NCBI RefSeq assembly: GCF_052425735.1
Contig: NC_135762.1
Location: forward strand, 7,192,001 to 7,256,000
Source: Oculina patagonica
Taxonomy: Eukaryota
Length of the DNA: 64,000 nt
Direction of reading: 5' to 3'
The notes beneath the pieces are model-generated. The model ran no database searches, was not told the origin of the DNA, and was given only the letters and a program-made list of their open reading frames with translations. Numbering within the stretch: the first letter of the stretch is position 1; every line of letters starts with the position of its first letter. The translations under genes were made by a program, and so were the position numbers. This document shows, in pieces, positions 5,871 through 41,800 of this stretch.

Positions 5871-8800
5871 TCATGGAGATTTTGGTTTGAGTTTCATCTC
5901 ACTTCCCTTGAGAAACCAGTTCCACTGATAATAACTGTTGTCATAGTTACCATTAAGAAGAGAATCGCCACAGGAGTTATACCACCAAGCTCCTCTGTTA
6001 TTTATAGCACAGTTGCTACTGGTCTTGTCGTTATCCCGATCCTTGGTAGAGAAAGACATGCCGTTATAATACTTTAGCTTATCCGTTGCTGAGCCAGAAT
6101 AGAAACCAACAAACAGCGTGTAGTTAGATGCCTCGTTAGTGACCGTAAAATTACTGTATTTAGCGTATTTATTTCCACTGGATGTTGTGTTGATTTCCAC
6201 TCGCAGCTGACTCGGAATCTCAGTCAGTTGATGAATCTTTTCATTTCCAAGCCAAAATTCTCCTCTGAGGTCACCGAACCCGTTCTTGTACTCGTCCCAA
6301 CCCCTGAAGAATCCAACGAACCCACTGAAGCGTTTGTGAAAGACAGTCCATCCACCACCATCCGTCTTCATGTCACAGTAGACTTCAAAACTGGTTTTGT
6401 TTGTTGGGTTCACTGTGTACACTCCACTCTTCTTGAAACCAGCAGAAAACAGCTCGGCGCAATCTCGGCCTGAGGAAATAAATTGCTTTAATTAATGATA
6501 GAAGTGAATCTTTTATCTTTTTTGCCTTGCCCAACTCAGTTGCGAATAAATATTTAGAACCTGCATTACGAGAAATGTATAGCTGCAATAAGTTCACGAG
6601 CTCTATGACAACCTACAAACGCTAGGTACCCCTTTTCTCATAGCCGCAAAAGACTAGTAACTTTAATAACAAAGAAAGAAGCAAAGATAAAGGGTTGAAA
6701 GAAAGATATCAAGAAAGAGAGAGAGAAAGACTCACTGTACAGAGGCAGAAAGACAGAGATAGAATAAAACCTGTCAAACCTGAACAAACAAGATGAAAAT
6801 GACATTATTATAATTAAATGTTTTAAATCAGTTTCGAGTTTGATAATAATATCATACTTAGCAACCAATTCTTCGTTAGGAGACACACATGCATAAAAAA
6901 ATAAGTAATCAACCTCGCTTACCAGTTTTTACAATCAGTTGCACCTCAGTCTCCACTTGAACAAACTCGCTCCGTGCAGAGCAGATATACGTTCCACTGT
7001 CTTTAGCCGTCAAACTGTTTATCTTCAGTTGTCCACCTTCCACTTGCGAGCGTTCCTCTGGTATGTTTCCTTTGCATCGTGTCCACGTGATGCTGGGTAC
7101 TGGGTGTCCGTCTGCGGAACAGTTCAGTGTGACTGTCTGTCCATGATAAAGTTCTATCTTGTCTGGCGGCTTGACTGTAAACTGAGGCACCACGTTGACT
7201 ATCAGAGCTGTCATGGCGTGCGATGTACCCATGACGTTGGTAGCAGTACAGATGTATGTTCCTGCGTCTTTCTTGTCTGTCTTTGTTATGGTCAAGGTCT
7301 GACCTTGGACAGTCGCTCTTCCACTGGGAAGTTGATCAAAGAGTTTGGTCCAAGATACCACCGGAGGGGGATATCCGATGACCTGGCACTTAGGGAGCTT
7401 GACATCTTTCCCGCTCTCGGCGTATATCGGTCCAGCGGGAAGAGATATCAGAGGGCGTGCTGGCAAGAGAAAGTTATTATTTTAATTAATCGGGCGTGGC
7501 CGATTTATAGTTTACCCTTTGGTCGTCCTAGACGATAGTCTCCTGTCGGGTAAAAATGACGGGGATAGCCTGGGCCAATCGGTTTCATTTCAGTTTTGAC
7601 AGTAAATCGTTGTAGGAACACTGGGTCGACTTTTGGGCTAATCTGCAATCTGGTTCTCTTCTTTGCTTCGGCGGGAGGACAGAGAAAAAAGCTTAAGGGG
7701 TAAAGTACTAATAATCACCATTGTGAAACTGTAGTTGCTTTGACAAGTTGAAGCTATTTTTGTAAATAAAAGGGGTAACGTCATTCATGTCACGCAATGT
7801 TTTTGTGGGAAACTTTGAAACTAGACGCTTTGCTGGTTTCTACAAATAGCAGTGTGATCTGGCGGTACATTTTTTTGAGGCGGACTCCACTTTAAAACTA
7901 TTTTTTATATATTTAGCAAGAAGTATGTCGATTTTCATTTCCGCACAGTTGGGCGTCAAAGTCGCCTGTCACAAAGAGTAGAATGTTTGCAGAACATGGT
8001 TTGGATATATTTTAGATTTGACTAGTGACGTTAGTAAGACACTTCTCAAGACGTCAGCAAAACATTGGTAATGTACAGTATTGGTGTGAACTTGAATGGA
8101 ATTTTTTACGAGATCAGTAAAGCTATCGAATGAAAAGATGACTTGAAAATGAAAACTTCGAATAATTATAATTAAATACCAATTGAATTTTAGATGAGAA
8201 ATTCCGGAAGTGACATCTGTGTTCAAAATAGGAATTTTTGTACAACTTAAAGTTCCGAAATAAAAGACCACATGTTTTGTAAAAATCACAGACAAACATG
8301 ATCAGGAAAACAAAACAGGCCAATGGGTTTTATTCACGAAAATACAACTTTCTTAAGAAAGAGTTTGTAAACAAGACAATGGAATCGAATTACATTTCAC
8401 ACGCAATTTGCATACATTTGAACTTGCAAAAAAGAAGTATCTCTGCCGAGACATAATAGCGAGACCTTACATTAATAATTATTGTATTCTGATCTGATTG
8501 TTATTTTTTATGCATTAACTATTTGAAAGTGGTTCTCATCGATGAAAACAAAACGGTTTTTCATTCACTGCTTGAAGTATTTATAGACGTGAAAACATTC
8601 GCTTAATCGAATTACATTCTGCACGAAATATTTTGTATCCATTTGTCCCGAAACTTTGAGGAAATTGAAATCTTTGTGGACAGTACTGCATAAAAGCAGT
8701 TCATAGAATTGAATAAAAAGATAAGAACCATATTGACAAAGGAAATTTTAAAACTTTATTTTGGCTCATTTTGACGAAATTCAGGATTTTCAAAGACTGC

Positions 8801-11800: not shown

Positions 11801-14800
11801 TTCTAACTCCATTGTTTCAGTCTGAATGTCTCAGTACTCGTCGGCGAACATCGCGCAATTGGCGAGCGCGCTCAAGTTTAGTTTTGGCGGGAAAGTTTTT
11901 CTCCTTTTACGACCGCAAAACACCAGCTAAATTTAAATTACGAGGTTCTATTTCATTGGCAAAACGTCTTTTCAATTCATCGTACAGTAACACAACTTTA
12001 CTTCAAAGTGACCGTGATATGGTGGCATATCAGGTCAGTGACTTGATATCGTAGAATATCAGGACAGTAGATCGCGCTTCTGATTGGCTACTTGCGAATT
12101 TGGGTACGGTAATACGGGTAACAAGCGCGCGCACGTAAACAAAAGGCGGCTTTTCTCTATCCGGTTGAGCTCGCGAGAGAGATAAATCGTCGTTTTCTCG
12201 AAAATGACTGAGTACGGTGACCTATCAGTTTTTTCTCGTATTTTGAGTATAGTGATCAAATTCTTTCTATAAAATGAATACAGATCAATTTCTATGTTTG
12301 AAAAATAAATTATCACCGGAAACGTGTACTTTGCCAGTACTTGCAAAGGAATTATTAAGGAATTGTGCGGCATATACAAGGTTTTCCTGCTCCTAAACGA
12401 ATGGTGATCCACCTTTTTTATTTCAAAATTCAATTTCCCCTAAGGTAATCAACTAGTAGCTAGGCAAAGTTTGGCTGAAAATCTATGTTCAGTTCTGATT
12501 TCAGGGGTAATGACCTTAAAGAGTGCATAGTCCTAAACTATAAAATTGGAAACCGGCGTGATCACTCTCCAATAATAATAATAAAAATACTGAGGCGCGT
12601 GAAGAAACGAGAAATTTTTTCTTGACAATAGGGCCTGCTAATAAACAATCGGGTTTGAGATCCTTCATACTTGCGATTAAATTTGTTTCTATTTTTTCCG
12701 GCTGAGAAAGTTTATTTACCTTGGACGTTGAGTGTCACAGAAGCCTGAGCGGTCCCCTGGTCAGTACGAATTGTACACACGTACATTCCATTATCACCGA
12801 CTGTCGCATTTTTGATATGAAGTGTTCCTTTGATGATGGAATATCTTCCTGCTGGGAGGGAACCATCTTCTTTGGACCACGACACTGTCGCGTCAACATT
12901 TCGCTCCGGAGAACACTTGAACACGGCGGACTGATCCAGGGCAACGGTCCTAACTGCCGGCGTAACGATAATCCCAGGGGCAGAAATTACATCCCCCGCT
13001 TGCCCCCTGAATGGCTGCAGGGAAGTCGGAGTAGGCAAGGTGGGTTCTCCAGGTTCACCCTTTTGGCCTTTTATCCCTGGGGGTCCACGGAGACCCGGAT
13101 ATCCAGGGGACCCCTGTGGTCCTTGTGGTCCTATCTTTCCCGGTGGTCCCTGAACACAAATCTGACTTTGGCTAGTGCAGATCTTTTGCGTTGCAGTGTA
13201 GACGGATTTGGTGATTTGTTGTTGTATTTCAGGGGCCAAAACACCATTGTCTCCTTTAGGGGATTTGGAGGACTCAACATCTCGCCGGTCTCTTTTCTGA
13301 GCTGAAGAACTGTCTGACTCGTCTTTCGAGAAGCGAATTCCTATGATAAAGGAGTAAATGGTGTTACAATGCTACTTGGAGCATCATTGATGAGATAAAC
13401 AAGTGAAATACGTTTTCTTTCACTTTACGGTTTGCTGGGGTCAATTACAGCTCGTAGCCATAATTTCTTAACAGCATTGGATAAACGCATTTTTTCTGTA
13501 TTGTTATTTAACATACCAGTGAAAATCACTCAGAAAAGCACCATCGTAAGTATTAAGACGGAATCCACTAGGAAGTCGAGTAATATTTATTAAAGTTGGA
13601 CAAAAATCAAGTACCAGAATAATTTAAATCCTATTGCGTTATTTCCTACCCTTAATAAAAGGTAAAGATGTAAGTAATTATCCGTGATAACACCAACAAC
13701 AATTTCTTATCAGAGTCTGAGAAAATGAATTTCAAAGTTCACAAGGTATAGGCAAACTCTCACGTGTAGCCATTTTGGAAATTCGTCTTAAGCGATTCAG
13801 TGGAATTTAGCGGAACTTCGAAATTTGTTTTCGATGTTTGGTGTTGTTAGAAAAGATTTCTTTTGATAAGATATTTGAAGCAGTAACAAAAAAGTTTGCA
13901 ATAAGGTGGAAATAATTCTGGTACAACAATTTCTTATCAGAGTCTGAGAAAATGATATTCAAAGTTCACAAGCTATGGGCAAAAGCTCACATCTTTTAAG
14001 CGATTCATGGGAATTCAGTGGAACTTCGAAATTAGTTTTCGATGTTTGGTGTTGTTAGAAAAGATTTCTTTCGATAAGATATTTGAAGCAGTAACACAAA
14101 AGCTTGCAATCAGGTGTAAATAGTTTTGGTACATAATTTTGTCCAATAACTACTCGAAGTCCTGGCGGATTTCCTCTTAAAATACTTCTTTCTACAATTG
14201 TTACAACAACGCTCACCAAGTTGATATAACGTGACGGTTTACCTTCAGAAAGTCGATCGGGAGAAAACAAATGTTAATCTTATTATCAAATCACTTCTAA
14301 CTTCTAGGTCCCCACTCTTAACTTGAGCTAAAGATTGTCGAAGTGTCACAGATCGATAATGAGTCTGGGATTAGATCTCGCGCGGTATTAAATTGAAATA
14401 ATTCAATTGCTTTAGTGGAATTCAAAACACCGAGGTTACAGTTTTGCAGCTATTAATAACGACAAGGATTTCTAGAAAATTCTTAATAAGTAAGTAAATA
14501 TTCTAGAAATCTTTTGCGCTGATCCAACCGATAGATTATTTCCATTTCTGTCGCTTTCTAAAGACAACACGACCCGGCAAATATTTCATGCCAACGCCCC
14601 TTCCAGATAACATCGACTGTTGAAGAGAACAGAAAACACCGAGAAACCTTTTCGTTCAGGATATTTAATTGCAAAACATGCTACCATGATCCCACAGATT
14701 GTCTTTCTAGCAACCTGAGGCCACGAAGCAGCCGAAATCGAAACGAAAGAATCAAGCTTTTGGGAAGGGAGCGTTAAGTATACTGGTAATGTTTGCCTGC

Positions 14801-15813
14801 CGTGGTTGCTTTCTCAACTGAAATCACCCTGTAGTTGCATTAGCTAAACGATTAAACATAAAAAAATACTTTATACATTTTAGATATTCTTCCACTAATT
14901 TTGAAAGAGCTGCAGAATTGCTAGCCAGCTCTTGATTATTTTGGCGAAAATCGTTGAACACAAAAACGCCTTTGCCAAGAGGAAAACACCCTATAACTTA
15001 ACCTTTTCACGTTTTAAAATTATTGGTGAAAAGAAAATAAATAAACGTTCTTACTCAAATTTTTGGCCTGAGTTACATTTATAGGATGCTCTTACGGTAC
15101 TGTTTCACTTTTTTAAGTTTCAAAGATTCTTATTAGAGAAGATAGAAGAGAGTTCATTGATTCGAGTTGTAAACTAACGCTCAAGTTAAGTTTTCTAGGA
15201 ACGGTGACAGGAAGTCGTTAAACCCGAGTGACCAGAAGAGTTGTTCGGTATTGATACATCTGATGCATTTAATAGCAGTTCTTTCCAAAACACTCGTGGT
15301 GTATATTTTTCAAATTATGGGTTTTATAAATTAAATTATGTGTAAGAACTACGAAGCGAATATATTTTCGAGTACGTTTTAGTTGCAACTAAGACGTCGT
15401 CTCCATCTGTTCGAGGCTATCTAAGGGCATGTACTGGACTGAAAACCGAGCTCTTTTGGCATAAAATTATTGCAACAGGGCGAATTGAGCAAGCAAGAAA
15501 ACCAATCATTCTTAAGCCTTTTCCATCTAAACCTGAGAAACGCATGAAAAGAGCGCATCTACAGCGCGTCTACTCGGCAACGTACTGTACTGAATTCAAT
15601 AAAAATAAAAATAGACTCACCGTTTGTTGGAATGGGCGAAACGCGCGTCGTCGGTAACTGTTTTTCTCTTTGTTCGAGAGCCTCAAGTCTTTCCTTGTAA
15701 GATCGTAGCTCCAACTCAAGCCTCACATAACCAACACAGTACAAAAAAACGCTTGTAATCAAAACACAACAACAAACCATAAGAAGGCGGGAAGATCCAC
15801 CAGCGCTCATCAT
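5871..15813 (-). CDS. CniFL-like type II TM-collagen-3xIg-FReD protein, copy B (intact, ~649 aa)
   Basis: Exons 15813-15621 (193 nt, TM), 13340-12720 (621 nt; KRDRR, 12 Gly-X-Y triplets, Ig1), 7459-6923 (537 nt; Ig2+Ig3) and 6469-5871 (599 nt; FReD with [21 protein letters not shown]...EFWLG, FST.DRDND, GAWWY). Total 1950 nt, continuous frame, phase-1 GT-AG introns. Confidence 0.92.
9878..10622. mobile_element. Non-autonomous Academ(H)-like element, 745 bp
   Basis: 24-bp TIR TAGACTTGC(CA/TC)CAAGTCGCTCGTT and 9-bp TSD AGGAGTTGT (9869-9877 / 10623-10631). Interrupts a repeat whose uninterrupted relative lies at ~60170-60660. Confidence 0.8.
11416..11577. repeat. 162-bp near-perfect palindrome (hairpin element)
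   Basis: 54-bp perfect inverted arms (TACCTAATCGTACC...GGTC), CCATGG on both sides and an inner hairpin; absent from the paralogous copy D intron. Confidence 0.9.
11582..12109. mobile_element. TA-flanked MITE (Tc1/mariner/pogo-like)
   Basis: TA|CCGTACCCAAAT ... ATTTGGGTACGG|TA; absent in the copy D intron at ~40625. Confidence 0.7.
13697..14135. repeat. Tandem direct duplication, unit ~225 bp, in copy B intron 1
   Basis: ACAATTTCTTATCAGAGTCTGAGAAAATG...GATATTTGAAGCAGTAAC occurs at ~13697 and again at ~13925. Confidence 0.85.
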
Positions 15814-25597: not shown

Positions 25598-27302
25598 TAT
25601 GTAATATATGTAAAGCTCCTGTTGAAACATTTGAGTTCCATGCTTCTGTTTTGTCAGAAAAAAATGTACGCTGAAGCTTCATTGATTTGTAAAATAATTT
25701 CATTTAGAGAGAGTTGTAAACAAAGGAAACAAAGAAAATTGTCAAGTAGTTGTTGATCGTTGGAGATGGTTCTCTGTTGCAAGTGTAATTCAAAGCATTG
25801 AATAAGGCAATTTTGGTGACATCAGTAAAACCCTCTGTTTTGCGTAATGGCATGTTGTCCTTATAGTTTGTAATCATGTAGTGCATGGAAAATTGTAAGG
25901 AGTGTTTGGAAAAATTAAGAAAATAGTTAACAGTATTTATTACATGTATTCACCAGTGGTGGAGGTGAACAGTGGTTGATATTTACCAAGCCACAAAGTG
26001 GCGAGGTAAATATCCACCACTTTCACCGAAACCGAGGTGAATAATATATAAACAATAGCCCCGATTTGGGGTGAAAATATGCAAGGATATTTGTTGCCGG
26101 ACATTATCTGTTCCAAGAAATGAACAGTTTTCCGAAAGCAAAGCTCAAGTAAAACTGTGAGCATTGAGGAAAGGATAATGTCCAAGGACAATATCCGTAC
26201 ATAATTTTGAAGCCAAATGGAGGCTATTGTGTTCATTATCCATCAAATATTTTTATGCAAGGCCGCATTGCTCAAAGCTTTGAAACATCAAAGTAATTCT
26301 GTCAGCATTCAAAATATTGTTAGTCTACTAAAAATGTTTAGTTCTATTAATTTTAACAATTTACTTGAAATCAAATCTTAACATTTGAACATAAATTGCA
26401 AAGTTCGTAAACTGGGGAATATCACTTGGGGAATATGATCTGATATTCCCCAATTTTGGCTGCATCATGTGACATGTTACAGTAAGCCTAATCGCAAGCG
26501 CAAAAAATATTTGATGGATTATAGAAAAGAACACAAGAAAGTGTTGGGGGAAGGAACATACAGCTCACAGCAAATCAAAAAATGGGTGATTGGCTTGAAA
26601 AATAATAGTGAAATATTGTTTAACTGAATTTATTAACAGCTTATATTACAGTGTGAATATTCCCATTTTTCTCATTTGAAATTTGCATGTAATTCCACAT
26701 TTTTCCTCCCTTCTAAGTTATTGTAACATATTTCCCACCCGAAACTAAAAATTGACAGGTGTCTTGCTAAGTTGTACTGATTCTACAGATCACCATGTGA
26801 CAACCTATTGTTTGTTTCAATGTTCAGTCTTTGCAAAACACAATATTGCCTTGAGGTGTGCAAAATTGAAAACCTTGAAAATTTCTCTAACTTGGCCAGA
26901 CTGTAGGTTACTGGAACTAATTGCAATTCAATGTCAATGGCTTAAGTTAACTTTTCTTTTATGTGAACAGGAACAAAAATGGTTTGCCAGCTACCACAAT
27001 GGGTGCATACAAGGCATGACTTCAAAATAAACCACAAATGAAACAAAATAAAAATCTGATTGAAAATGAATTAATTCGAAAAAAAATTCAGAATATCAAC
27101 TTTCTGGCCAAGTTTTCCATGGCATCACAGATTACTTAATATACATGTACATTTGAATGAAGGGGTTCATTGAATAAGGCCCTAAAGTGACTCCTGATCT
27201 TATATGAAATTCTCCCTTTGATTTACAAACATTACATAGGGCGGATAGGAAGGATCATAAGTCACCTGGAGGTCCATTCCAGGCATCCCTCATTATTGTA
27301 TT

Positions 27303-30300
27303 CTAACGTGCTTTTCTTTGTCTAGAAATGTTTCTCTTGTGCTTGTTTATCCACCTGAACATGTCTTGAAGGTCAAAGTTTGACAGGAGGGTAGACTTGG
27401 TATCACCAAAGTGGGCATAGGTACGCCCTGGTGTCCAACAGAAAGCCTTCTGGGTGATCAGCTCTGAGACAACCTTGCGTAAATCAGACTCCACTGAAAG
27501 TTCATAGTGGTGTCCAGAACGACGGATGACACAACACTCTTGATCAAAGTTGTCGAGTAACACCTTAGTGAAATCAATTGCATGGCAGTAGCGATCCATA
27601 GCCTTGTGGTTTGTTGCATTAGGTCCCAGTTTTTTCCTGACTTCTTTCAGTAATCGATTGAAAAACTCCAGGAGCAAATCAAGGGGAATGTTTTTCCCCA
27701 GCCCTGACTTTAACTGTGCAGTTCTGTTCCAAATAAGTTCATGAGAACTTTTGGGTGAGAGCAATGCATGTACCTGAAAAATCATCCCTAGGGCTTCAAG
27801 AGCATACTTTGTACTCCCAGGGTCCATTCTCAAGTAAGGCAATTGAAACTTCCAGCATCTGAAGATACGTTTCCCATCACCCTCTTTTATGGCATCAAAA
27901 AAGTTCAAAATCAGCATGCCATATTCTAGGAAAGAGCACTGATAATTGAACATGTCATCCTTCTCAGGAACTTTGTCTGAAGGTGCCATGTCACTTGAGA
28001 AAAGTAGCCCTTGGGAATCTGAAGATGGGATCTGCTGATTATGGGTAGATTCATGATCACTCATTCGCTTTCCCCTGCATGCAAAGGTCTTACCACAACC
28101 TGGAAAAAAACAAATGTATCTGCCATCATCAGTTTGACATCTGGCCTCTTCTTCCTCAACGGCCTCTGCAGCTAAAAGGCTGTTGAAAATTTTCTCAACA
28201 TTTTCTCTTTGAATGACATAGCCATCTACAATGCGTGTGGCAATTTTGCGGACATATTCCTTTCTCTCCATATTGCTGGCTTCAGGGAGGTCTGGGCGAA
28301 AATATTCACCTTTGGGGCTGTCTGAAATGCCATCCATCCCCAGCTCATGTACCGCGGCTGCTATTAACCTTGCTTTAACTTCAAGGTCAAAAAATTTTCT
28401 ACAGGGATTAACAGCTGCATCCACGTCGGCTCTAACATTTCTTCTGTTGATTAAATTTCTATCACTGTAGAGGGTACACTTGTCCCCAGATGATTTGGTG
28501 TCATAGAAGTTCTTGAAAGCAACCTAAAAACAGATTTGTGGTGACATTTAACTTACGTTTTGTACAAAATTGGTGTGCAAATGGAAATGCCACTGTATGC
28601 AATTTGAAGACATATTAGGAAACAGATATTTACCATATTATTTGCTTAATTAATACTGACTTGCATTGAAATTAGCATGGTGGCAGTGACTTGTAATTAT
28701 AAAAAAGGGGTCATAATAAAAAAGTGATAGTCTATGTCTATCCCCAGATGACTAAAAAAATACACAATAAAAACATACTTTTAAGCTTTAGTTTTATGCT
28801 CATTTGACCAAAAAGAAAAGAAGAAAAATAAATTTTACACAATTTTTTGTGTGGTGTCATAAAACATTGACTGGCTTTTTGTAGGTTAAGGCTTTGCCTT
28901 CAAAGGGTATCTCTAAGGCTGAAGGTGTTAAAGAGGGTTGGTATTTTACAAGATTGAGTATAGAAAAGATTACCAACTGGGGGTATATGAAAGGGGTACC
29001 ATTGGCAATTGAAGGTATCCAAAAGGGCTACCTTTTCTATCAAAAGTAGTTTGACATAAAGGAGAATGAGGACCTCGGAGCAGAACATCCCTGTTTTAAA
29101 AATTTTGGAGGTACCTAATCTAAAGGGGAGAATTCTTGTGATAGCCACATTCAGATAATTATTTCTAATGATTGATCTACATTGTTGGGAGAATTTGTTA
29201 AAGGTTCAAAACAATTTCACTTTGGTGACCATTTTATTAATTCTCCTAACCTCTTGAATTAGTATTTATATTGTGAGGAGAATTAAGTGAGTATAAATCC
29301 ATATTCACCAAGCTGCTAACATTTACATTGTGCAAAATACCTTTAAAAACTTATTTCCCGAGTGCCAATCAGCAATTTCCAGGTGAATTCCTTCCAGTCG
29401 TTCCTCAGGGGTAAAGCCATTTGCTAGCTCGAACAGTGCATTCACGCCTCGTTCTACTGAGAGCTGATCAGCAACCAAACCTTGTGAAGAATACACTCTT
29501 TCATCTCCATCACCATAGTAGGGTACATATTGATGCAGTTCTGTGAGTACTTGCTGAATGCCATCTGCATCATTTTCATTGTGATACAGCATTCCCAAAA
29601 AATTCTACAAAGAGAAAACACATGATATGCATAAAAGAAAAAAGAGGATTGATGTATATTCCAAGTCTGTCTTTGAGGATAAACAACCAAGAACAAAATT
29701 AAAAGTAACCTCTATATGGCATATCATCTACATTAAATGCCAACCAGCCATGCTGTAGATTTAATTTTTATAATTGAATTTTTTGACAAATTTACAATGT
29801 ATTACCATTTCTGATTTATCAGCCATTTCCTTGCTATACTGGTGTGGAATGTGTTTGCAGACCACAGGCTTGAGGAATGACAAACAGGGTATTTCCACGA
29901 CTGCCCTCTCAGTAAGGGTTATGTAATTTTCCCTCTGAAGTTGGTGCTCGTGACGACTTGGCAAGCACAGACCATTCTCCATCTGCATAAGAGCCTCTGT
30001 GGCAGGTTTGTCACTGGATAAGTGGTTTCCTGATACACGATTTTCAACGGACAGGTGGGAAACCCAGTGGACATCAACGTTTTGGTGCTCTTCGGTCATG
30101 TAGTGAACTTGCTGCTTGAAGTCGAAGTTGTCGAACACCAACTTTCTTCCTTTATCAGCAGATATAATTACAGCTTGCTCAGGCTGCGGCTCTTCTACTG
30201 CAGGATGGGAAATGGTGGCAGATGGTGCATTAGTTGGTGCTCTGTGTTTTTTCTCAAGCCGTGCTGTCTCCTCCTTGACCTTCTTTTGGACGGAAGCAGC

Positions 30301-31965
30301 ATGATCTTTTCCAAATTCGTCCAGCTTTTTGTAGTAGTAGGAATGGCCTGTAGTGACTCTGAGGGAACCCAGTCGACAAAGAGAGCCCTGTAATAAATAA
30401 AGCCTGTGTTGATGCATGCTAAAGTCAAAGGCTACATTGTTTTGACCAATGCACCATTAATTTGCAATACCAGATCATTCAGCCAGTACTACACTGTAGC
30501 TACAATTTTTTTTATTAACACCATAGTCTGCATAGAAAAATTTAAATTAGGTTAAAATTTATCATTTTGGTAACTAATGCTCTGAAAGGAAAATGGCATT
30601 TCTTATAAATTAAGCTGTAAAAAGTATGTGTTGTGGTTCAAATCTGTCTTTGGTTTAAAATGCTTCTAACCAGTTTTATTTTTATTTACCCTTGTTTTGG
30701 ATTACGATAATAAATTCAATTTTAGCTGGTTTAAAAAATTTTAAACCAAAGATTAATAATTTTCAAACCACATATATCATACCTATGACAATGCCTTGAG
30801 GTGGGATGCAATGTATTCAGATGCAAGAAAGCAACAACTACTGTATAGTGACATGCCAAATTATTCACTTAGCAAATAAAATTTAATATGGTCCTCAGTG
30901 CTTTACGTGTGGACTAATGGAGTACGTAAAAACATTTGATAAAAATTGTTAAATACTCACAATTATCCCTGAATGATACAAAGTGATAGTGTTGATCAGC
31001 TGCATTGCATTCATACATGGGGACCTGTTCTTCAGCAAGACTGCCGCGGACATGCACACTGATGGCTGCCAGAATCGATCATCTCTTTTGCTTTTTCTGA
31101 CGCTGGCCGTCCATAGCACGGCACTGAACAAGGGAGCTTTCGATTCAAGTTCGGTGTTGAACTTCTTGAGTGAGAAGGACTGAAGATCTTTTTTGCTTGG
31201 TGATCGTAGGCAACTAGGATTTTTTAACGAGCACATAGCAGTACACTCACGATCAACTTCCTCCAAATACAACTGTTGCACATGTTTTCTCAGAATGGGA
31301 TTTTTCCACACTGCCCTTGCGATTTGCTTGTACGTACCGCGGCAAAGCATCTTGCCGAGCGACTCCAAACCTTCGTGTAAGTTGTTGACTTTCGCATTTG
31401 GTCGGCTTGGCCACTTGATTGAGACTTGAACGACTGTCTTCTTTTCCTCGACGTCGACTTCGCGGGCAGGAATCGGCGAAACAGGTCCAGCGAAAGCAGC
31501 AATGTCAACAGGACGACTTTTCTCCTTACAAGGTGTCGAGGTAAGTATACTTGACAACTGATCCGCCGATGTTTTACTTGTGAATGCGCTGCTATCGTCT
31601 AATGTCACAGATGCGCTCGAATCCTCCAACGCAACACGCTTTGCAGCTTGTTCTTGGAAAGAGCTTGACTGGTTAGAGGACTGCGATGTGATAACATTGA
31701 CTGGTACTGGATTAACAGAAGACTTCTTTGCGAGGAAGATTTTTTGAATAGTGTTATTTACCTCTCGAAGGTTCGTCGAGAGCGCCCTTCGTTTCTTCAA
31801 CACCGACAGACAATTTCTACAAATGTACGGCGAATTAATTTCCACTTTATACTCTAACGATAGCAATTCCTCTCGCACGTTAAAAGGATTGCCCCTTCGT
31901 CCATCAACAAGATTTTTATCCGTATTTTTCACGATACCTAAACCACAAAGCACACACGAACTCAT
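27303..31965 (-). CDS. Academ-type transposase, 4 exons, ~1023 aa
   Basis: Exons 31965-30961 (1005 nt), 30387-29806 (582), 29604-29341 (264) and 28523-27303 (1221); all phase-0 GT-AG joins, no stops. N-terminal CxxC...CxxC; candidate catalytic motifs LVFDNFDF, VADQLS, EIADWH, NIPLDLLLEFFN; C2H2 finger CFFPGC...HESTH. Confidence 0.85.
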
Positions 31966-32365
31966 GACAAATCTCACATTTTGGTTGTTGGTGTGAAAAA
32001 AAGTGATAGACTATACAGAGAAGGCCCATTATGTAAACCCCGCGAAAATTATAACCAATCGAAACGCGTTCTTTCGATGATGTAATGATCCACTGGTGAT
32101 AGCCAATCAGATCATTTTCCAAACATTCCAGAAAAAGTCACGTGGTCCGGAACACGATTATCAACGGTAAATCACAGACGCTCCTTCCCGATTTTTATTG
32201 AGGGGAGGGGGCGGCTGTACACAGGCTATTGCCAGGCAAAAAGTCACTTATCGCGCCCATTAAAAAGATCTGCGATTTTTAAGTCTACAAACCACTAACA
32301 GTCAATTTAATCCTAGTTCTTAATTTCAAAGTCCTTGTTTGGAGCGGGGCTACCAAATGAAAGCA

Positions 32366-35300
32366 TCACGGAGATTTTGGTTTGAGTTTCATCTCACTTC
32401 CCTTGAGACCCCAGTACCAGTAATAATAAGAACTGTCTCCATAGTTACCATTCAGATGAGAACCAGAGGTACAGCTGTTAAACCACCAAGCTCCTCGGTT
32501 ACTTACAGCACAGTTGCCACCGTTCTTGTCACTATCTCTATTCTTGGTAGAGAAAGGCATGGTGTTATAATAGTAAAGTCGATCCTTTGCTGAGCCAGAA
32601 TAGAAATAAAACAAACAGCGTGTAGTTAGTTGCCTCGTTAGTAATCGTAAAATTACTGTATTTAGCGTATTTATTTCCATTGGTTGTTGTGTTGATTTCC
32701 ACTCGCAGCTGACTCGGAATCTCAGTCAGTTGATGAATCTTTTCGTTTCCAAGCCAAAACTCTCCTCTGACGTCACCAAACCCGTTCTTATACTCGTCCC
32801 AGTCCCTGTAGAATCCAACAAATCCATTGAAGCGTTTGTGAAAGACAGTCCATCCACCACCATCCGTCTTCATGTCACAGTACACTTCAAAACTGGTTTT
32901 GATTGTTGGGTTCACTGTGTTCACCTTCGCGTTTTGGCTCGACAAATAAATTTTCCGTAGAAGAGATGTATGATGTCTTGCCGAAGTTCCCCAAGCGAAT
33001 CGCGAATGAGCACCCGCATATTCTGCAAAAATTGGACGGACCGCTTGATTTCGTCTTTCTGCCTCTTTTTGCAGGTTTTTTGGGGGTTGAAGAAGTCGTC
33101 TCAGACGCAAACTCAACATCGAAATAAAAACTCACGAGTTGTTTTGTAAACTGACACTTGAACAAGCACTTAACCGCTCAAATTTTATTGGTCCGATTTA
33201 ATTGAAAGGTCAAGAGGCGGAGTTGTAAATTACAAGGCGATGACAAGGGGAGGAGTCTAATACTTCCACTTTTATTCAAAGATGTCTACAGCCTCTCTAT
33301 TTTTCCTTCGCTCGCTCCCCCCCCCCCTCCCCCCGCGCGCTCGCGCTTCGCGCTCGCTTCGTTTGCTTTTTTCCGTTGAAAACTCGAGAGGCTGTGGACA
33401 GTCTAAAAGATATCAAGAAATGGAGAGAAAGACTCCATATTTCCTTGTTAGCACTAGTAAAATTACTAATTTTAAAAACACGAAACAACTTTTTAAGAAA
33501 GACTTTTTAGCAGAGAAAGACTCGCTGTACAGAGGCAGAAAGACAGAGATAGAATAAAACCTGAACGAACAAGATGAAAATGACACAAATTAAATGTCAA
33601 TCAGTTTGAAGTTTGATAATTATATCATACTTAGCAACCAATTCTTCGTTAGGAGACACACATGCGTGAGTGATCAGCATTGCTTACCAGTTTTTACAAT
33701 AAGCTGCACCTCAGTCTCCACATGAACGAACTCGCTCCGTGCAGAGCAGATATAGGTTCCACTGTCTTTAGCCGTCAAACTGTTAATCTTCAGTTGTCCG
33801 CCTTTCACTTGAGAGCGTTTCTCTGGTATGTTTCCTTTACATCGTGCCCACGTGATGCTGGGTACTGGGTGTCCGTCTGCGGAACAGTTCAGTGTGACTG
33901 ACTGTCCGTGATAAAGTTCTATCTTGTCTGGCGGCTTGACTGTAAACTGAGGCACCACGTTGACTATCAGAGCTGTCATAGCGTGCGATGTACCCATGGC
34001 GTTCGTTGCAGTACAGATGTATGTTCCAGCGTCTTTCTTGTCCGTCTTTGTTATGGTCAGGGTCTGACCTTGGACGGAGGCTCTGCTACCGGGGAGCTGA
34101 TCAAAGAGTTTGGTCCAAGATACCACCGGAGGGGGATACCCGATGACCCGGCACTTAGGGAGCTTGACATCTTTTCCGCTCTCGGCGTATATCGGTCCAG
34201 CGGGAAGGAAGATCAGAGGACGAGCTGGGCACGAGAAAGATTCGATTTCAATTTGTGTATAAAACAATATATAGAAGCAGATAATACTCATAATATTCAA
34301 GTAAATATCCAGTAATTTTTCCATATTGGACAGTACGTGGATAAGTGCCCAATATGATTGACGGTTGATAGAACTACTGTCCAATTCAGAAGACCAGAGT
34401 TCAAAACATGCCTTCAACATTTGGCCAAGCCTAACTTGCTGCAGTTTTCTTGTGTAATTATTTCAAATTTAATAGTTAATATACCTATGCTCAATTTGAA
34501 GCCCACGTGATCATTTTCCAATTATTTAAATTTGTTATTGACAGTAAGCTACAATAAGACCTGCTGCTGAACGATCGGGTTCGAGGTCTTGTATCCTTGC
34601 AATTATTTCGTTTTTTACTTTTTTCTACTGAGATATTGAAACCTCAGTTTATTTACCTTGGACGTTGAGCGTCACAGAAGCCTGAGCGGTCTCCTTGTCA
34701 GAACAAACTGTACACACGTACATTCCCTTATCACCGACTGTCACATTCTTGATACGAAGTGTTCCATTGATGATGGAATATCTTCCGGCGGGGAGGGAAC
34801 CATCTTCTTTGGACCACAAAACTGTCGCGTCAACATTTCGCTCCGGAGAACACTTAAATACGGCGGACTGATCCAGGGCAACGGTCCTAACTGCCGGCGT
34901 CACCACAATCTCAGGGGCGGAAATAACATCCCCCGCCTGCCCCTGAATGGCTGCAAGGAAGTCGGAGTCAGTGAGGTGGGATCTCTAGGATCATCTTTTT
35001 GGCCCTTTATCCCGGGGGGTCCGAGAGGGCCCCGTGGTCCTCGTGGTCCAATCTTTCCCGGTGGCCCCTGTGGTCCTTGTGGTCCCGGAGGTCCCTGCAT
35101 ACAAATCTGACTTTTGCTAGTGCAGATCTTTTGCGTTGCTGCGTGGACGGATTTTGTGATTTGTTCTTGTATTTCTGGAGCTAAAACGCCATTGTCTCCT
35201 TTGGACGATTCAGCATCTCGCGAGTTCCGTTTTTGAGCTGAAGAACTGGTTATGTTAACATAAGCAACGGGAATGTCTAAAAAAAAAGGAGTAAATACTG

Positions 35301-36743
35301 TTATGCTATCTCGATCGTCGATTTAAAATTTGTGAAATACAAGAATGTTTGTTCTTGTTGGGGATAAATGACGCCTTTCAACTTCTTTTGTATTATAAGA
35401 AGATAACAACATAAAAATCGAGATGGCCTAAGTTTTTTATTTTTATATTTCATACTTATGGAGGGTAGGCCTGCGCTCAGAAAGACAGAACCATAAAACA
35501 CTTTACTCAAAATAATGAAAGGCCTCGGGCGGAAATTGCCTTTTGCTCGGACACCCTAAGTGAGACCAAAAAATCCGCCCTAAGTGAGACGACTAGCATA
35601 TCCACCTCTTGCATATTGGAGCCATTCACCGGAAATTTTTGATGCCCACTTATCGCGAGGTTTTCCATCTTTGCTTGTTTACACGAAAATTCCAATGGAA
35701 CAAGGTTGAAGTGTTTTTTTGAGTCTCGACCGAAAAATCAAATAGACAAAAAGCCGATCGTCTAAACCATTATTTAAGATCCTCCATCCACGATCCTAAC
35801 TGCTTCAAAGCAAACAGAGTCTAGAATCCAGCCTCGCCAAAATTATCAATCGATAAGCAATCCACTGTATTTTCAACATCTGCATATCTGATTATCGTAG
35901 AATTCCGCAATCCGTGATCATTTTAAGGTGAAATTCGTTAATCCGCGAGCCTACTCACCCCCTCCCCCCCCCCCCCCCCCTGCTCTCAATAATGTTTAAA
36001 TTCTTTATGGCTACTTTTGAGGCTTAGTTTTCGCAACGTATTTTCCCTAAATCGTGCATTTAGTAACCAAGATTGTCACTATTATATTATGTAAGGTAAG
36101 GACATCGACCGCGAGCTGCAGATAAATGTACGTGTCAGCACAGGCAGACCACACTATGTGTTCGTGGTTAATAATCGTTCACATACGATTAACAAAAGAA
36201 ATATGTTGAAATCTATGAGTGTTATGAATAAAGCCCTGAAAATTACATTTCTTAATGAATCTCGTTCTATATATTTCAATAAAGGTGAATTAATGTTAAT
36301 TGACTCGCGTGTGGTGTTTTTTCGCGTTCCTGGGCCGTATTAAGCGTTTTTGTTTTATGTTACGTTCGGCCAAAGGCCGGTAAGAGGAGAAAAGGAGATG
36401 CACTCGACTAGATTAATTCCTGGTTGTCTTTTTTAGCCGACTGAATATCTCGTTTATGTTTAAAAGGCGAATCAAAAAAGTCGTTAATAATGCGGAACAA
36501 GCCATCCAACTTACCTTCATTCAAGGATTTGAAAACTGGAACTGTTGTTGTCTTTTGCTGGTTTTCTTCCAGAGCCAGAATTCTCTCATTGAGAGCTTTT
36601 AACTCATATGCTAGTCTCATAAAACCAACGCTGTAGAAAACCACGCTGATTAAAGTCAAAAAACAACAAAAAGCCACGAGAAGGCGAGAAGATCCGCTAC
36701 TGCCAGCACTCGTCATTGTGTATGGTACAGTAGTGTCTAACAT
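32366..36743 (-). pseudogene. CniFL-like copy C, pseudogene
   Basis: Exons 36743-36515, 35276-34657 (620 nt; 1-nt deletion in a C-run at ~34940), 34224-33688 (intact Ig2+Ig3) and FReD remnant 32920-32366. The FReD acceptor and first codons are replaced by a TE fragment, and there is a +1 frameshift at ~32605-32612. Confidence 0.88.
32921..33405 (-). mobile_element. One-ended Academ-like fragment replacing the 5' end of the copy C FReD exon
   Basis: Ends in GAGAGGCTGTGGACAGTCTA (TAG terminus on the minus strand), with an internal inverted partial copy at 33284-33297. Carries a coding remnant (TPKKPAKRGRK...FCRICGCSF...STENLF) fused directly to FReD sequence at 32920. Confidence 0.6.
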
Positions 36744-38818: not shown

Positions 38819-41800
38819 TCAGGGAGATTTTGGTTTCAGTTTCATCTCACTTTCCTTGAGGTCCCAGTTCCACCGATAATAACTTCCTGCATATTGAGCG
38901 TTCAGAATATGACTGGTGCCACAGCTGCTATACCACCAAGCTCCGTAGGCTTTAGCACAGTCACTGCCGGTCGACTTGTCATTATCCCGATCCTTGGTAG
39001 AGAAAGGCATGCCGTTTACATACTGCTTAAGATAATCCGGTGCTGAGCCAGAATAGAAACCAACAAACAGCGTGTAGTTAGATGCCTCGTTAGTAACTGT
39101 GAAGTTGCCATATTTTGCATACCTTTGGAGACCTGATGTTGTGTTGATTTCCACTCGCAGCTGGCTCGGAATCTCAGTCAGTTGATGAATCTTTTCGTTT
39201 CCAAGCCAATACTCTCCTCTGACGTCACCAAACCCGTTTTTATACTCGTCCCAGCCCCTGTAGAATCCAACGAACCCATTGAAGCGTTTGTGAAAGACAG
39301 TCCATCCACCACCGTCCGTCTTCATGTCACAGTACACTTCAAAACTGGTTTTGTTTGTTGGGTTGACTGTGTACACTCCACTTTCCTTGAAGCCAGCAGA
39401 AAACAGCTCGGCGCAGTCTCGGGCTAAAAAAATAGAATGAATAAATGAATGACTGAAATGCAGAATTTTTGGCTAATACTCCAGCTGTCTTGTCCAATAA
39501 CTATAAGTACTGGCAACAAAGTTATCAAAATGTAGAAGTGGCTAACATAAATATAGAGTACAGGCGATCTAGTCAACCTATGTCTTAGTAACTTGAAAAA
39601 AATGCACAAAAATATTGAACAAACTGGACTATTCACAGCCCTCGAGCTCCATTTTTTTGTTCTGCATTTTTCTTCGACCGTTGAACGCAGGAAAAAAAAT
39701 ACGAGAGAACAGGACGCAAGGGAACAGTTTACTAGAAACTGACAGAAATAAAAGAGTTTTAATCTAAGGGATCGAGGAGAACGAGGTAATTTCAACATTT
39801 AAAGAATAAAAGAACGCATATATACTTATGATTTGCATATAGGAGATAACGCATGTGTACAGTGCTTACCAGTTTTAACAATCAGTTGCACCTCAGTCTC
39901 CACATGAACGAACTCGCTCCGTGCAGAGCAAATATAGGTTCCACTGTCTTTAGCCGTCAAACTGTTTATCTTCAGTTGTCCGCCTTCCACTTGAGAGCGT
40001 TCCTCTGGTATGTTTCCTTTGCATCGTGTCCACGTGATGCTGGGTAATGGGTGTCCGTCTGCGGAACAGTTCAATGTGACTGTCTGTCCATGGTAAAGTT
40101 CTATCTTGTCTGGCGGCTTGACTGTAAACTGAGGCACCACGTTGACTATCAGAGCTGTCATGGCGTGTGATGTACCCATGGCGTTGGTAGCAGTGCAGAT
40201 GTACGTTCCTGCGTCTTTCTTGTCTGTCTTTGTTATAGTCAAGGTCTGACCTTGAACGGTGGCTCTTCCACTAGGAAGTTGATCGAAGAGTTTGGTCCAA
40301 GATACCACCGGAGGGGGATATCCGATGACCCGGCACTTAGGGAGCTTGACATCTTTCCCGCTCTCGGCGTATATCGGTCCGTTAGGAAGGGAGATCAGAG
40401 GGCGAGCTGACACGAGAAAGTTATTATTTTAATTTTGTGTATAAAACCAGAAGCATATATATATGCTTCTGATAAAACAATATGAAGTATAGCAGATAAT
40501 GATCATAATTACATTGCTATACTTAAATAAAATGCAAGGAAATTTTTAAATTTTTTTATGTGCAATTATTTCCAAATTAAGGTCATTGCTTAGAATTGCA
40601 TTGCGCATCCTTTTTGCGCAGGATTTTACGGGTAACAAGCGCGCGCACGTAAACAAAATGGCGGCTTTTCTCTATCCGGTTGAGCTCGCGAGAGAGATAA
40701 ATCGTTGTTTTCTCGAAAATGACTGAGTACGGTGACCTATCAGTTTTTTCTCGTATTTTGAGTATAGTGATCTATAAAATGAATACAGATCAATTTTTAT
40801 GATTGAAAAATAAATTATTACCGGAAACGTGTACTTTGCCAGTCCTCGCAAGACTCTCGCAAGGGAATTATTAAGGAATTGTGCGGCATATACAAGGTCT
40901 TCCTGCTCCTAAACGAATGGCGATCCACCTTTTTTATTTCAAAATTCAATTTCCCTTAAGGTAATCAACTAGTATGCAAAGTTTGGCTGAAAATCTATGT
41001 TCAGTTCTATTTCGGGGGAATGACCTTAAAGAGTACATAGTCCTATACTAAATTGTAAGCCCGCGTGATCACTCTTCAATAATAAAAAAGAAAAAAAAAT
41101 GAGACGCGTGGAGACACGAGAAATTTGTTCTTGACAATAGGGCCTGCTGATAAACGCCAGATCGGGCTTGAGATCTTTCATACTTGCGATTAAATTTGTT
41201 TCTACTTTTTTCCGGCTGAGAAAGTTGAAACTTAAGTTTATACCTTGGACGTTGAGCGTCACAGAAGCCTGAGCTGTCCCCTGGTCAGTACGAATTGTAC
41301 ACACGTACATTCCATTATCACCGACTGTCGCATTCTTGACATGAAGCGTTCCTTTGATGATGGAATATCTTCCGGCGGGGAGGGAACCATCTTCTTTGGA
41401 CCACGTTACTGTCGCGTCAACATTTTTCTCTGGCGAACACTTGAACACTGCGGACTGATCCAGGGCAACGGTCCGAACTGCCGGCGTAACTTTAATCCCA
41501 GGGGCAGAGATAACATCCCCCGCCTGCCCCCTGAATGGCTGCAGGGACGTAGGAGTCGGTAAGGTGGGTTCTCCAGGTTCACCCTTTTGGCCTTTTATCC
41601 CTGGGGGTCCACGGAGACCCGGATATCCAGGGGATCCCTGTGGTCCTTGTGGTCCTATCTTTCCCGGAGGTCCCTGCACGCAAATCTGACTTTGGCTAGT
41701 GCAGATCTTTTGCGTTGCAGTGTAGACGGATTTGGTGATTTGTTGTTGAATCTCAGGAGCCAGAACGCCATTGTCTCCTTTGGGGGACTTGGAGGACTCA

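What the first reader, a model, noticed from the sequence alone, without database searches (positions are those of the whole stretch)
6470..39869. Mosaic genes: 5' halves pair A-C and B-D, but intron 3 and FReD pair B-C
Seen: exon 1, exon 2 and upstream DNA group A with C and B with D. Yet intron 3 of B (6700-6890) aligns closely with intron 3 of C (33407-33665), while intron 3 of D (39424-39869) is largely unalignable. FReD diagnostics agree: B and C share [20 protein letters not shown] and KGSEMK, whereas D has [21 protein letters not shown] and KESEMK. Inference: gene conversion or unequal crossover through the near-identical 537-bp Ig exon swaps recognition heads between stalks and promoters, a germline combinatorial diversification route.
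Basis: partly seen in the sequence, partly recalled or inferred. Interest (0 to 1): 0.75.

Follow-up and report, generated by a model that had tools for sequence, protein, structure and literature searches.

The report
Mosaic coral ficolin-like receptor gene array
Four neighbouring coral genes for a membrane-anchored collagen-immunoglobulin-fibrinogen receptor belong to a 17-copy tandem array whose members have repeatedly exchanged pieces, so no copy has one family tree; this is a familiar way for immune-type gene clusters to evolve, though it has not been described for this family.

Summary
All genes are on the minus strand. Upstream DNA, exon 1 and exon 2 pair A with C and B with D: quartet-informative sites are 71:1:1 and 44:0:0. 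Part of intron 3 pairs B with C (94.7% over about 150 nt), and D's intron 3 is unalignable.

The FReD claim is only partly right. B-C support sits in the last ~145 nt of the exon. Sites e4:314-453 favour A-C|B-D. Two of the four "diagnostic" motifs are simply D-specific changes.

A-D are 4 of 17 paralogs of the known CniFL family (hydrophobic anchor, collagen, three Ig, fibrinogen domain) in a gapless 235-kb array.
- AU tests reject congruence between the stalk and FReD trees in both directions (p 4e-7 and 1e-5; third codon positions 7e-4).
- PHI is significant, and intron classes are reshuffled.
- More than ten tracts of 270-510 nt are at least 98.5% identical in an 82-93% background.
- Promoter, exon 1 and collagen stalk (to e2:307) stay as two non-mixing types. 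Everything 3' of that is a shared pool.

The chimera is C, not B: an A-type 5' half joined in intron 2 to a g17-like 3' half. C is decayed, and 9 of 17 copies carry frame lesions.

Ectopic recombination is well supported. An exchange specifically through the Ig exon, and an adaptive role, are not shown. An earlier follow-up in this scan (s1-316944) noted loop swapping in the same kind of family elsewhere in this genome.

The parts
15732..15813 (-). Gene B exon 1 (inferred): start codon plus hydrophobic anchor [27 protein letters not shown], phase-1 donor
   Evidence: A homologous segment lies upstream of 15 of the 17 copies. The sequence and donor were read. No RNA evidence for the splice.
12720..13340 (-). 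Gene B exon 2 (621 nt): linker, collagen G-X-Y stalk, Ig1. B-type stalk.
   Evidence: Pfam Collagen plus Ig.
6923..7459 (-). Gene B exon 3 (537 nt): Ig2-Ig3
6470..6922 (-). Gene B intron 3. The stretch 6722-6892 aligns with C 33512-33665 at about 95%. The whole intron is nearest to g17 (84-89% over 92% of its length).
5871..6469 (-). Gene B exon 4 (599 nt): FReD with stop codon. Only about 5871-6015 (e4:455-599) groups with C. e4:314-453 groups with D.
25..561 (-). Gene A exon 3. A's FReD exon lies outside the window at C5:7190923-7191521.
995..1615 (-). Gene A exon 2 (621 nt), A-type stalk
2819..2909 (-). Gene A exon 1 (inferred): [30 protein letters not shown], phase-1 donor
36626..36716 (-). 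Gene C exon 1 (inferred), 98% identical to A's
34657..35276 (-). Gene C exon 2 (620 nt), A-type stalk, with a 1-nt deletion that shifts the frame. Identical to g11 apart from that indel.
   Evidence: Unitigs with and without the extra base occur in runs X1 and X2.
33688..34224 (-). Gene C exon 3. The g17-like part of C begins about 70 nt upstream of it, in intron 2 (about 34293).
32925..33405 (-). Dispersed ~480-nt repeat (at least 40 genomic copies at 81-93%) in C's intron 3. It replaces the 3' part of the intron, the acceptor and the first 47 nt of the FReD exon. g11 has the same lesion.
   Evidence: Unitig depth there is 10-40 times higher.
32366..32924 (-). Gene C FReD remnant (e4:48 to the stop codon) with a 1-nt insertion. 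It is 98.4-99.1% identical to g11 and g17.
23567..32228 (.). Transposon inserted 137 nt downstream of C's stop codon. With it removed, C's flank runs on without a break against g17's flank (98.3% over 3.7 kb).
   Evidence: One search gave the lead. Searches tested it.
43882..43963 (-). Gene D exon 1 (inferred), B-type
41244..41864 (-). Gene D exon 2 (621 nt), B-type stalk
39870..40406 (-). Gene D exon 3
39424..39869 (-). Gene D intron 3. It belongs to a class shared with g01 and g10 and does not align with B or C.
38819..39423 (-). Gene D exon 4: FReD, nearest to g13, g08 and g16, with unique motif states

Best explanation
A, B, C and D are four of 17 same-strand paralogs of a cnidarian ficolin-like (CniFL) gene in one gapless ~235-kb tandem array.

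Each gene has four coding exons:
- exon 1 encodes an N-terminal hydrophobic anchor;
- exon 2 encodes the collagen stalk and Ig1;
- exon 3 encodes Ig2-Ig3;
- exon 4 encodes the fibrinogen-related head.

The copies are mosaics made by repeated non-allelic homologous recombination in the germline. Two processes contribute. One is short-tract gene conversion of a few hundred bases. The other is at least one larger exchange or duplication whose edge falls inside a gene, in intron 2.

The promoter, exon 1 and collagen stalk (up to e2:307) persist as two sequence types that do not mix. A, C and seven others are one type; B, D and six others are the other. Everything 3' of that point (Ig1, Ig2-3, introns, FReD) behaves as a common pool exchanged among both types.

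The B-C resemblance arises because C, and its near-copy g11, carry an A-type 5' half joined to a 3' half of a B-type lineage. That lineage is now best represented by g17, and B is an older relative of it.

Shown: the incongruence, the tracts and the junctions. Inferred: the mechanism by which each junction formed, the direction of transfer, and any selective benefit.
For: Array and architecture: with no N in 244 kb.

Trees:
- Exon 2 splits the two stalk types at 100/99 support.
- Exon 4 has a different deep split at 98/98 that places B with C/g11/g17 and D with A.
- AU tests: exon 4 data reject the stalk split (delta lnL 128, p 3.7e-7), and exon 2 data reject the FReD split (delta lnL 158, p 1e-5).
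- Third codon positions of exon 4 alone still reject the stalk split (p 7e-4), so amino-acid convergence does not explain it.

Quartet support differs among eight segments (chi-square 216, p 3e-38), with a switch inside exon 4 at e4:453/455 (p 1.5e-4).

All 38 near-fixed differences between the types lie in e2:44-307. None lies in exon 3 or exon 4.

Pairwise-distance matrices correlate only within the block from upstream DNA to e2:360 (r 0.69-0.83). Correlations involving any block 3' of e2:360 are mostly near zero and at most 0.51.

PHI gives p <= 0.001 for the concatenated exons and for exon 2, and 0.004-0.008 for exon 3.

Intron classes show all four combinations between the 3' end of intron 2 and intron 3.

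Discrete tracts of at least 98.5% identity sit in an 82-93% background:
- g02-A, intron 3, 331 nt, P 7e-17;
- g02-g10, intron 2 into e3:121, 412 nt, P 4e-13;
- g13-g16, from e2:308, 506 nt, P 5e-19.

C against g17 is 98.3% from e4:48 through 3.7 kb of flank. C's 5' half is 84% to g17 but 94-97% to A-type genes.
Against: PHI is not significant within exon 4 alone (p 0.13-0.19). There 40-50% of all site pairs are incompatible, so recurrent mutation at hypervariable sites may add to the signal.

Each junction could come from conversion, unequal crossover or a duplication edge, and these are not told apart.

Public short-read unitigs are only 100-230 nt long here, so the long-range joins of the assembly could not be checked independently.

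No transcript evidence links particular stalks to particular heads.

Nine of 17 copies carry frame lesions, so much of the mosaicism may have no functional effect.
Confidence: 0.8

Rival explanations
1. One gene conversion or unequal crossover, resolved inside the conserved 537-bp Ig exon, moved a whole FReD head plus intron 3 between the B and C lineages, giving clean module swapping.
For: Intron classes on the two sides of exon 3 occur in all four combinations. Exon 3 data reject the stalk split (p 0.005) but not the FReD split (p 0.07). One tract ends at e3:121.
Against: B-C identity is only 89% in the FReD, and their shared intron stretch is about 150 nt long. C's junction with its g17-like half lies in intron 2, about 70 nt upstream of exon 3. 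The stalk block ends at e2:307. The FReD exon switches partner at e4:454. Most tract ends lie outside exon 3.
Confidence: 0.12
2. There was no recombination. The FReD tree differs from the stalk tree because of convergent or diversifying selection and uneven rates in the binding loops.
For: The 3' third of the FReD exon is the most variable coding block (mean distance 0.20, dN/dS 0.47). Incompatibility there is high even between neighbouring sites.
Against: Third-position-only data still reject the stalk split. Non-coding intron classes and multi-hundred-base intronic tracts at 99% identity show the same reshuffling. C and g17 share 3.7 kb that includes non-coding flank.
Confidence: 0.03
3. 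The mosaics are assembly chimeras, for example collapsed or mis-joined haplotypes or paralogs in a repetitive array.
For: The copies are 90-99% alike, which is hard to assemble. C and g11 are near-identical over 3.1 kb. In run X1 the only unitig across C's exon 4 insertion (32608) lacks that base.
Against: There are no gaps in 244 kb. The mosaic pattern involves all 17 copies with many different junctions. C and g11 have quite different flanks, and g11 lacks exon 1. X1 unitigs tile the C junction region 34179-34407 with 0-1 differences, though X1 may be the source sample. Both states of C's exon 2 indel occur in two runs labelled as different organisms.
Confidence: 0.05

Closest known systems
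CniFL, cnidarian ficolin-like proteins (first reported with the Aiptasia genome, ref. 27 of PMC5094078; surveyed in actiniarians in PMC5094078)
   Same: The domain set and order are the same: N-terminal transmembrane-type segment, collagen repeats, three Ig domains and a C-terminal fibrinogen domain (PMC5094078, Fig. 4 legend and methods). Database relatives carry this name (Anthopleura 'ficolin-like protein 1', Exaiptasia 'Ficolin-2').
   Different: Published counts are 1-7 transcripts per sea anemone. Here there are 17 copies in one array, and more than 100 further FReD matches on other chromosomes. I found no report of tandem organisation, pseudogene content or recombination for this family.
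Biomphalaria glabrata FREPs (IgSF plus fibrinogen domain), diversified by gene conversion and point mutation (PMC12074976; PMC3313920)
   Same: Ig domains precede a fibrinogen-related head. Both are multigene families, and in both gene conversion is invoked as a source of variant heads.
   Different: FREPs are described as soluble proteins with no collagen stalk in their listed domain set, and their diversification is reported as somatic. Here only germline mosaicism between paralogs is shown, and the exchange is not confined to one domain.
Concerted or mosaic evolution of tandem immune-receptor arrays by ectopic gene conversion and unequal crossover (vertebrate MHC and KIR, Ig V segments, plant NLR clusters; from general knowledge)
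   Same: Short near-identical tracts lie in a diverged background, trees differ along the gene, pseudogenes are interspersed, and duplication units have different edges.
   Different: Here a sharp boundary at e2:307 separates a non-exchanging promoter/stalk dimorphism from a freely exchanging 3' pool. A coral genome paper states that gene conversion is very rare in corals (PMC10236652), so this array is a counter-example.
Vertebrate ficolins (collagen stalk plus fibrinogen head)
   Same: A collagen stalk presumably trimerises and presents fibrinogen-type heads.
   Different: Ficolins have no Ig domains and are secreted. These genes have three Ig domains and an N-terminal hydrophobic anchor.

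Membership tests
CniFL (cnidarian ficolin-like protein) | Collagen triple-helix repeats (PF01391) | tested here: met
   Exon 2 of B scores PF01391 at E 4.4e-7, above the cutoff. G-X-Y runs are visible in all four genes.
CniFL (cnidarian ficolin-like protein) | Ig-clan domains between collagen and head (three in most members) | tested here: met
   One Ig domain in exon 2 and two in exon 3, with I-set/Ig_3 E values of 1e-10 to 6e-33.
CniFL (cnidarian ficolin-like protein) | C-terminal fibrinogen domain (PF00147) | tested here: met
   B scores E 9e-60 and D scores E 7e-57.
CniFL (cnidarian ficolin-like protein) | N-terminal transmembrane segment (reported for most members) | tested here: inconclusive
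   A conserved upstream exon encodes a 19-20-residue hydrophobic run after a short polar start. Its phase-1 donor matches the phase of exon 2. No topology predictor was run, and no RNA evidence shows the splice. It could be a cleaved signal peptide.
CniFL (cnidarian ficolin-like protein) | Cnidarian (anthozoan) origin | tested here: met
   The runs holding the stretch include ones labelled 'coral metagenome'. The nearest full-length relatives are from Actinia, Exaiptasia, Anthopleura and Nematostella.
Ectopic gene conversion among paralogs | Discrete tracts much more similar than the surrounding sequence, including non-coding DNA | tested here: met
   Sixteen tract listings of at least 98.2% identity in an 82-96% background (thirteen of them 266-506 nt long), with binomial P from 1e-7 to 1e-27.
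Ectopic gene conversion among paralogs | Statistically incongruent phylogenies along the gene | tested here: met
   AU tests, PHI and quartet heterogeneity.
Ectopic gene conversion among paralogs | Non-reciprocal transfer with an identified donor and recipient | not testable with these tools
   This needs outgroup arrays from sister species or population data to give the events a direction.
Gastropod FREP | Secreted IgSF-FBG protein without a collagen stalk; somatic diversification | tested here: not met
   A collagen stalk and a hydrophobic N-terminal exon are present. Somatic variation was not examined.
Ficolin | Collagen domain directly followed by the fibrinogen domain | tested here: not met
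   Three Ig domains lie between the two.

The most novel reading that the evidence does not exclude
The array may work as a true diversification system rather than a by-product of tandem repetition. In this reading, two fixed promoter/stalk chassis draw on a shared pool of Ig and FReD cassettes. That pool would include the many frame-broken copies acting as donors, as pseudo-V genes do in birds. Exchange could even occur somatically, so that each colony or cell lineage displays new stalk-head and loop combinations.
Probability: 0.1. Interest if true: 0.85.

Novelty: new member of a known kind. Interest (0 to 1): 0.5.

Why it matters
CniFLs are candidate pattern-recognition receptors for microbes and symbionts in corals and anemones. 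This array shows three things:
- The family can grow into large tandem arrays.
- Its binding heads and Ig modules are reshuffled among copies.
- Two promoter/stalk types are kept apart while the rest is exchanged.

That gives a concrete germline source of receptor variety in an animal without adaptive immunity.

It also runs against the published generalisation that gene conversion is very rare in coral tandem arrays (PMC10236652).

Finally, it is a warning for phylogenies and selection scans of this family. Single-tree methods will mislead, and recombination inflates signals of positive selection.

Tried and rejected
1. Plus-strand reading. The long ORFs and all Pfam hits are on the minus strand.

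2. B-C as a recent exchange. Rejected: no tract of at least 98.5% identity involves B or D, and B's best FReD matches are only about 90%.

3. C and g11 as a haplotig-type assembly duplicate. Rejected: their near-identity ends 92 nt upstream of exon 2 and at the transposon site. The flanks differ, and g11 lacks exon 1.

4. The same transposon downstream of both C and g11. Rejected: the two inserts show no similarity.

5. The 99%-identical intron 2 core as a mobile repeat. Rejected: it occurs only in this array.

6. Public reads as a test of chimerism. Only 100-230-nt unitigs lay on the stretch, so long-range joins could not be tested. The one polyA raw-read run gave 2 reads.

7. A profile-free search with exon 2 for family size. 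It was swamped by giant multi-Ig proteins, and only about 10 hits were informative.

8. First-pass exon 1 prediction from ORF and donor heuristics. It gave wrong donors for the B-type, corrected by homology.

9. Block-wise dN/dS above 1 in the FReD. Not found; the maximum was 0.47.
Full report
WHAT IS THERE

The window is G000:C5:7192001-7256000. The genes of the finding lie on the minus strand. Each has four coding exons.
- Exon 1 is a short exon, about 1.4-2.4 kb upstream of exon 2, that encodes the start codon and a 19-20-residue hydrophobic run. It is inferred from conservation and matching phase. There is no RNA evidence for it.
- Exon 2 (621 nt) encodes a linker, a collagen G-X-Y stalk and Ig1.
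- Exon 3 (537 nt) encodes Ig2 and Ig3.
- Exon 4 (about 600 nt) encodes the fibrinogen-related domain and the stop codon.

B's exons 2-4 splice into an open 585-codon frame. This hydrophobic anchor + collagen + three Ig + fibrinogen architecture is that of the cnidarian ficolin-like proteins (CniFL; PMC5094078). The nearest full-length database relatives are anthozoan proteins, some of which are named ficolin-like.

A-D are not a closed set. A tblastn of the surrounding 244 kb, which contains no N, finds 17 minus-strand copies between C5:7172015 and 7400567. I call them g01, g02, A, B, C, D and g07-g17. Four diverged plus-strand copies are interspersed. A's FReD exon lies just left of the window, at C5:7190923-7191521.

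CHECK OF THE OBSERVATION

I scored quartet-informative sites for A, B, C and D as AC|BD: AD|BC: AB|CD.

| Segment | AC\|BD | AD\|BC | AB\|CD |
|---|---|---|---|
| 500 nt upstream of exon 2 | 71 | 1 | 1 |
| exon 2 | 44 | 0 | 0 |
| intron 2, 5' part | 17 | 0 | 2 |
| exon 3 | 8 | 5 | 0 |
| intron 3 | 5 | 18 | 9 |
| exon 4 | 10 | 15 | 3 |
| 500 nt downstream | 3 | 5 | 25 |

The heterogeneity among segments is extreme (chi-square 216, p 3e-38).

B 6722-6890 aligns with C 33512-33663 at 94.7% over 152 columns. B against D scores like shuffled sequence.

The FReD claim is only partly right.
- All quoted motifs exist. [10 protein letters not shown] and KGSEMK are the family-majority states, and D is unique at both. 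Only NRGAWW (shared with C, g11 and g17) and NGNY (shared with C, g09, g10 and g17) are shared derived states.
- Within exon 4, sites at e4:327-453 favour AC|BD and sites at e4:455-581 favour AD|BC. The breakpoint lies between positions 453 and 455 (permutation p 1.5e-4).
- So B resembles C only in the last ~145 nt of the exon (window about 5871-6015).

FAMILY-WIDE TESTS

- The exon 2 tree splits an A-type (g02, A, C, g07, g11, g12, g14, g15, with g08 intermediate) from a B-type (g01, B, D, g09, g10, g13, g16, g17) at 100/99 support.
- The exon 4 tree has a different deep split at 98/98: {A, g02, g12, g15, D, g08, g13, g16} against {B, g01, g10, g07, g14, g09, C, g11, g17}.
- AU tests reject each split on the other exon's data (delta lnL 128, p 3.7e-7; delta lnL 158, p 1e-5).
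- Exon 3 rejects the stalk split (p 0.005) but not the FReD split (p 0.07).
- Third codon positions of exon 4 alone still reject the stalk split (p 7e-4) and still place B beside g09 and C/g11/g17. Protein-level convergence is therefore not the cause.
- PHI is significant for the concatenated exons and for exon 2 (p <= 0.001) and for exon 3 (p 0.004-0.008). It is not significant within exon 4, where incompatibility is high everywhere.

WHERE THE BLOCKS END

All 38 near-fixed differences between the two stalk types lie at e2:44-307. There are none in exon 3 or exon 4.

Pairwise-distance matrices correlate strongly only among upstream DNA, e2:1-200 and e2:201-360 (r 0.69-0.83). Correlations involving any block 3' of e2:360 are mostly near zero and at most 0.51. 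Even adjacent thirds of exon 4 are weakly correlated or uncorrelated.

The array therefore holds two promoter/anchor/collagen chassis that do not mix, and a 3' pool (Ig1 to FReD) that is shared by both.

Synonymous divergence is lowest in the centre of the gene (Ig3 0.15; FReD 5' part 0.20). It is highest at the ends (stalk 0.35; FReD 3' part 0.47). dN/dS is below 1 in every block, with a maximum of 0.47.

NON-CODING EVIDENCE AND TRACTS

Clustering the introns gives classes that are recombined among genes. For example, one class of the 3' end of intron 2 occurs with intron 3 classes a, c and d. Another occurs with a, b and c. That is a four-gamete pattern across exon 3, so some exchanges did resolve in or next to the Ig exon.

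A scan for near-identical runs finds tracts of at least 98.5% identity inside HSPs that are otherwise 82-93% identical:
- g02-A, intron 3, 331 nt, 2 mismatches against 41 expected, P 7e-17;
- g02-g10, from intron 2 into e3:121, 412 nt, P 4e-13, between an A-type and a B-type gene;
- g13-g16, from e2:308 into intron 2, 506 nt, P 5e-19;
- C-g12, from upstream into e2:131, 400 nt, P 2e-27;
- g11-g17, intron 3, 267 nt;
- g01-g17, e2:66-514.

Five A-type genes also share a 99%-identical intron 2 core. Only one tract end lies in exon 3.

WHO IS THE CHIMERA

C is 98-100% identical to g11 from 92 nt upstream of exon 2 to 137 nt past the stop codon, and not beyond. g11 has no exon 1.

From e4:48 onward, C is 98.3% identical to g17. 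Once the transposon at 23567-32228 is removed, that identity continues for 3.7 kb through the downstream flank. It is 94% from about 70 nt upstream of exon 3 through the first half of intron 3. A third copy of that flank lies between g10 and g11.

C's 5' half is A-type, at 94-97% to other A-type genes, and only 84% to g17. g17's own 5' half is B-type, at 96% to g01.

Either C/g11 or g17 is therefore a chimera, with its junction in intron 2. B's intron 3 is nearest to g17 (84-89% over 92% of its length). D's intron 3 belongs with g01 and g10, while D's FReD is nearest to g13, g08 and g16. That is a further switch.

STATE OF THE COPIES

C has three lesions:
- a 1-nt deletion in exon 2;
- a 1-nt insertion in exon 4;
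- a ~480-nt dispersed repeat (at least 40 genomic copies) in place of the 3' part of intron 3, the acceptor and the first 47 nt of exon 4.

Nine of the 17 copies have frame-breaking lesions. Eight look intact in exons 2-4: g01, A, B, D, g07, g10, g14 and g16.

READS

Four public runs were laid on 32100-37000. The contigs are 100-230-nt unitigs, so long-range joins cannot be tested.
- Both states of C's exon 2 indel occur in two runs labelled as different organisms.
- C's exon 4 insertion is not seen in the one unitig that covers it.
- The repeat in intron 3 shows 10-40 times higher depth.
- A run guessed to be RNA covers exons 2-4 but neither intron 2 nor the upstream DNA. This fits transcription of C or of copies at least 97% alike.

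INTERPRETATION

The best reading is repeated germline ectopic recombination in a tandem array. It combines short-tract gene conversion with at least one larger exchange or duplication that has an intragenic edge. The divergent promoter/stalk block is excluded from exchange, either because about 15% divergence blocks homologous pairing or because selection keeps it apart.

New stalk-head and loop combinations are a demonstrated outcome. That they are used or selected is an inference.

The kind of process is well known from other immune-type arrays, and gene conversion is invoked for snail FREPs (PMC12074976). I found no report of it for CniFLs. A coral genome study states that gene conversion is very rare in corals (PMC10236652).

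An earlier follow-up in this scan (s1-316944) described variable loops swapped between copies of the same kind of family on another piece of this genome. My results agree with it and add the stalk/pool boundary and the C/g17 junction.

Noticed in passing
window 612-955 (A intron 2) and the matching stretches in g07, g12, g14, g15 (C5:7259989-7260332, 7333578-7333921, 7365229-7365572, 7374275-7374622): A 344-nt core of intron 2 is 98-99% identical in five A-type genes, although their flanking exons are only about 95% alike. It occurs nowhere else in the genome. It is either a hot spot of conversion or a constrained intronic element such as a regulator or an RNA.
   Followed up: partly
database relatives P0068, P0088, P0126, P0127: In anthozoans the same collagen plus three-Ig chassis carries other C-terminal heads: TLDc (Acropora, Pocillopora), F5/8 type C (unnamed contig) and C-type lectin (Nematostella). 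Head replacement on this chassis has therefore also happened on a deep evolutionary scale.
   Followed up: partly
window 32925-33405, and the same in g11 (C5:7321530-7322117): A dispersed ~480-nt repeat (at least 40 copies at 81-93%, 692 first-look candidates) replaces the acceptor and the first 47 nt of the FReD exon in C and g11. g17's intron 3 shares only the last ~110 nt of it.
   Followed up: partly
window 23567-32228: The transposon noted by another reader sits 137 nt downstream of C's stop codon. g17 provides the empty site, because C's flanks are continuous in g17 at 98.3%.
   Followed up: yes
whole array C5:7172015-7400567: Nine of 17 copies carry frame-breaking lesions: 1-nt indels in g02, C, g08, g13 and g15; 5+1 nt in g09; 10 nt in g17 exon 3; large deletions in g12; a lost acceptor in C and g11. 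Some single-base indels could be assembly errors.
   Followed up: partly
g17, C5:7397399-7400567: The end of g17's exon 2 is interrupted by about 2.1 kb. The sequence from e2:612 to intron 2:274 reappears at intron position 2178-2462, and the annotated donor is not GT.
   Followed up: no
C5:7284295-7284454 (window-relative 92295-92454): An orphan A-type exon 1 copy (93% identical) lies 16 kb from the nearest exon 2. g08 and g11 have no exon 1 of their own.
   Followed up: no
C5:7163805-7167639, 7256164-7256778, 7295555-7297008, 7356484-7360354 (plus strand): Four diverged paralogs (about 50% amino-acid identity in the FReD) lie on the opposite strand, interspersed in the array. One FReD lies just right of the window.
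   Followed up: no
window 20149-23566; C5:7307762-7311172; C5:7391980-7395390: A 3.4-kb intergenic block is present three times at 98.6-98.7% identity: downstream of C, between g10 and g11, and downstream of g17. This points to recent multi-kb segmental duplications within the array.
   Followed up: partly
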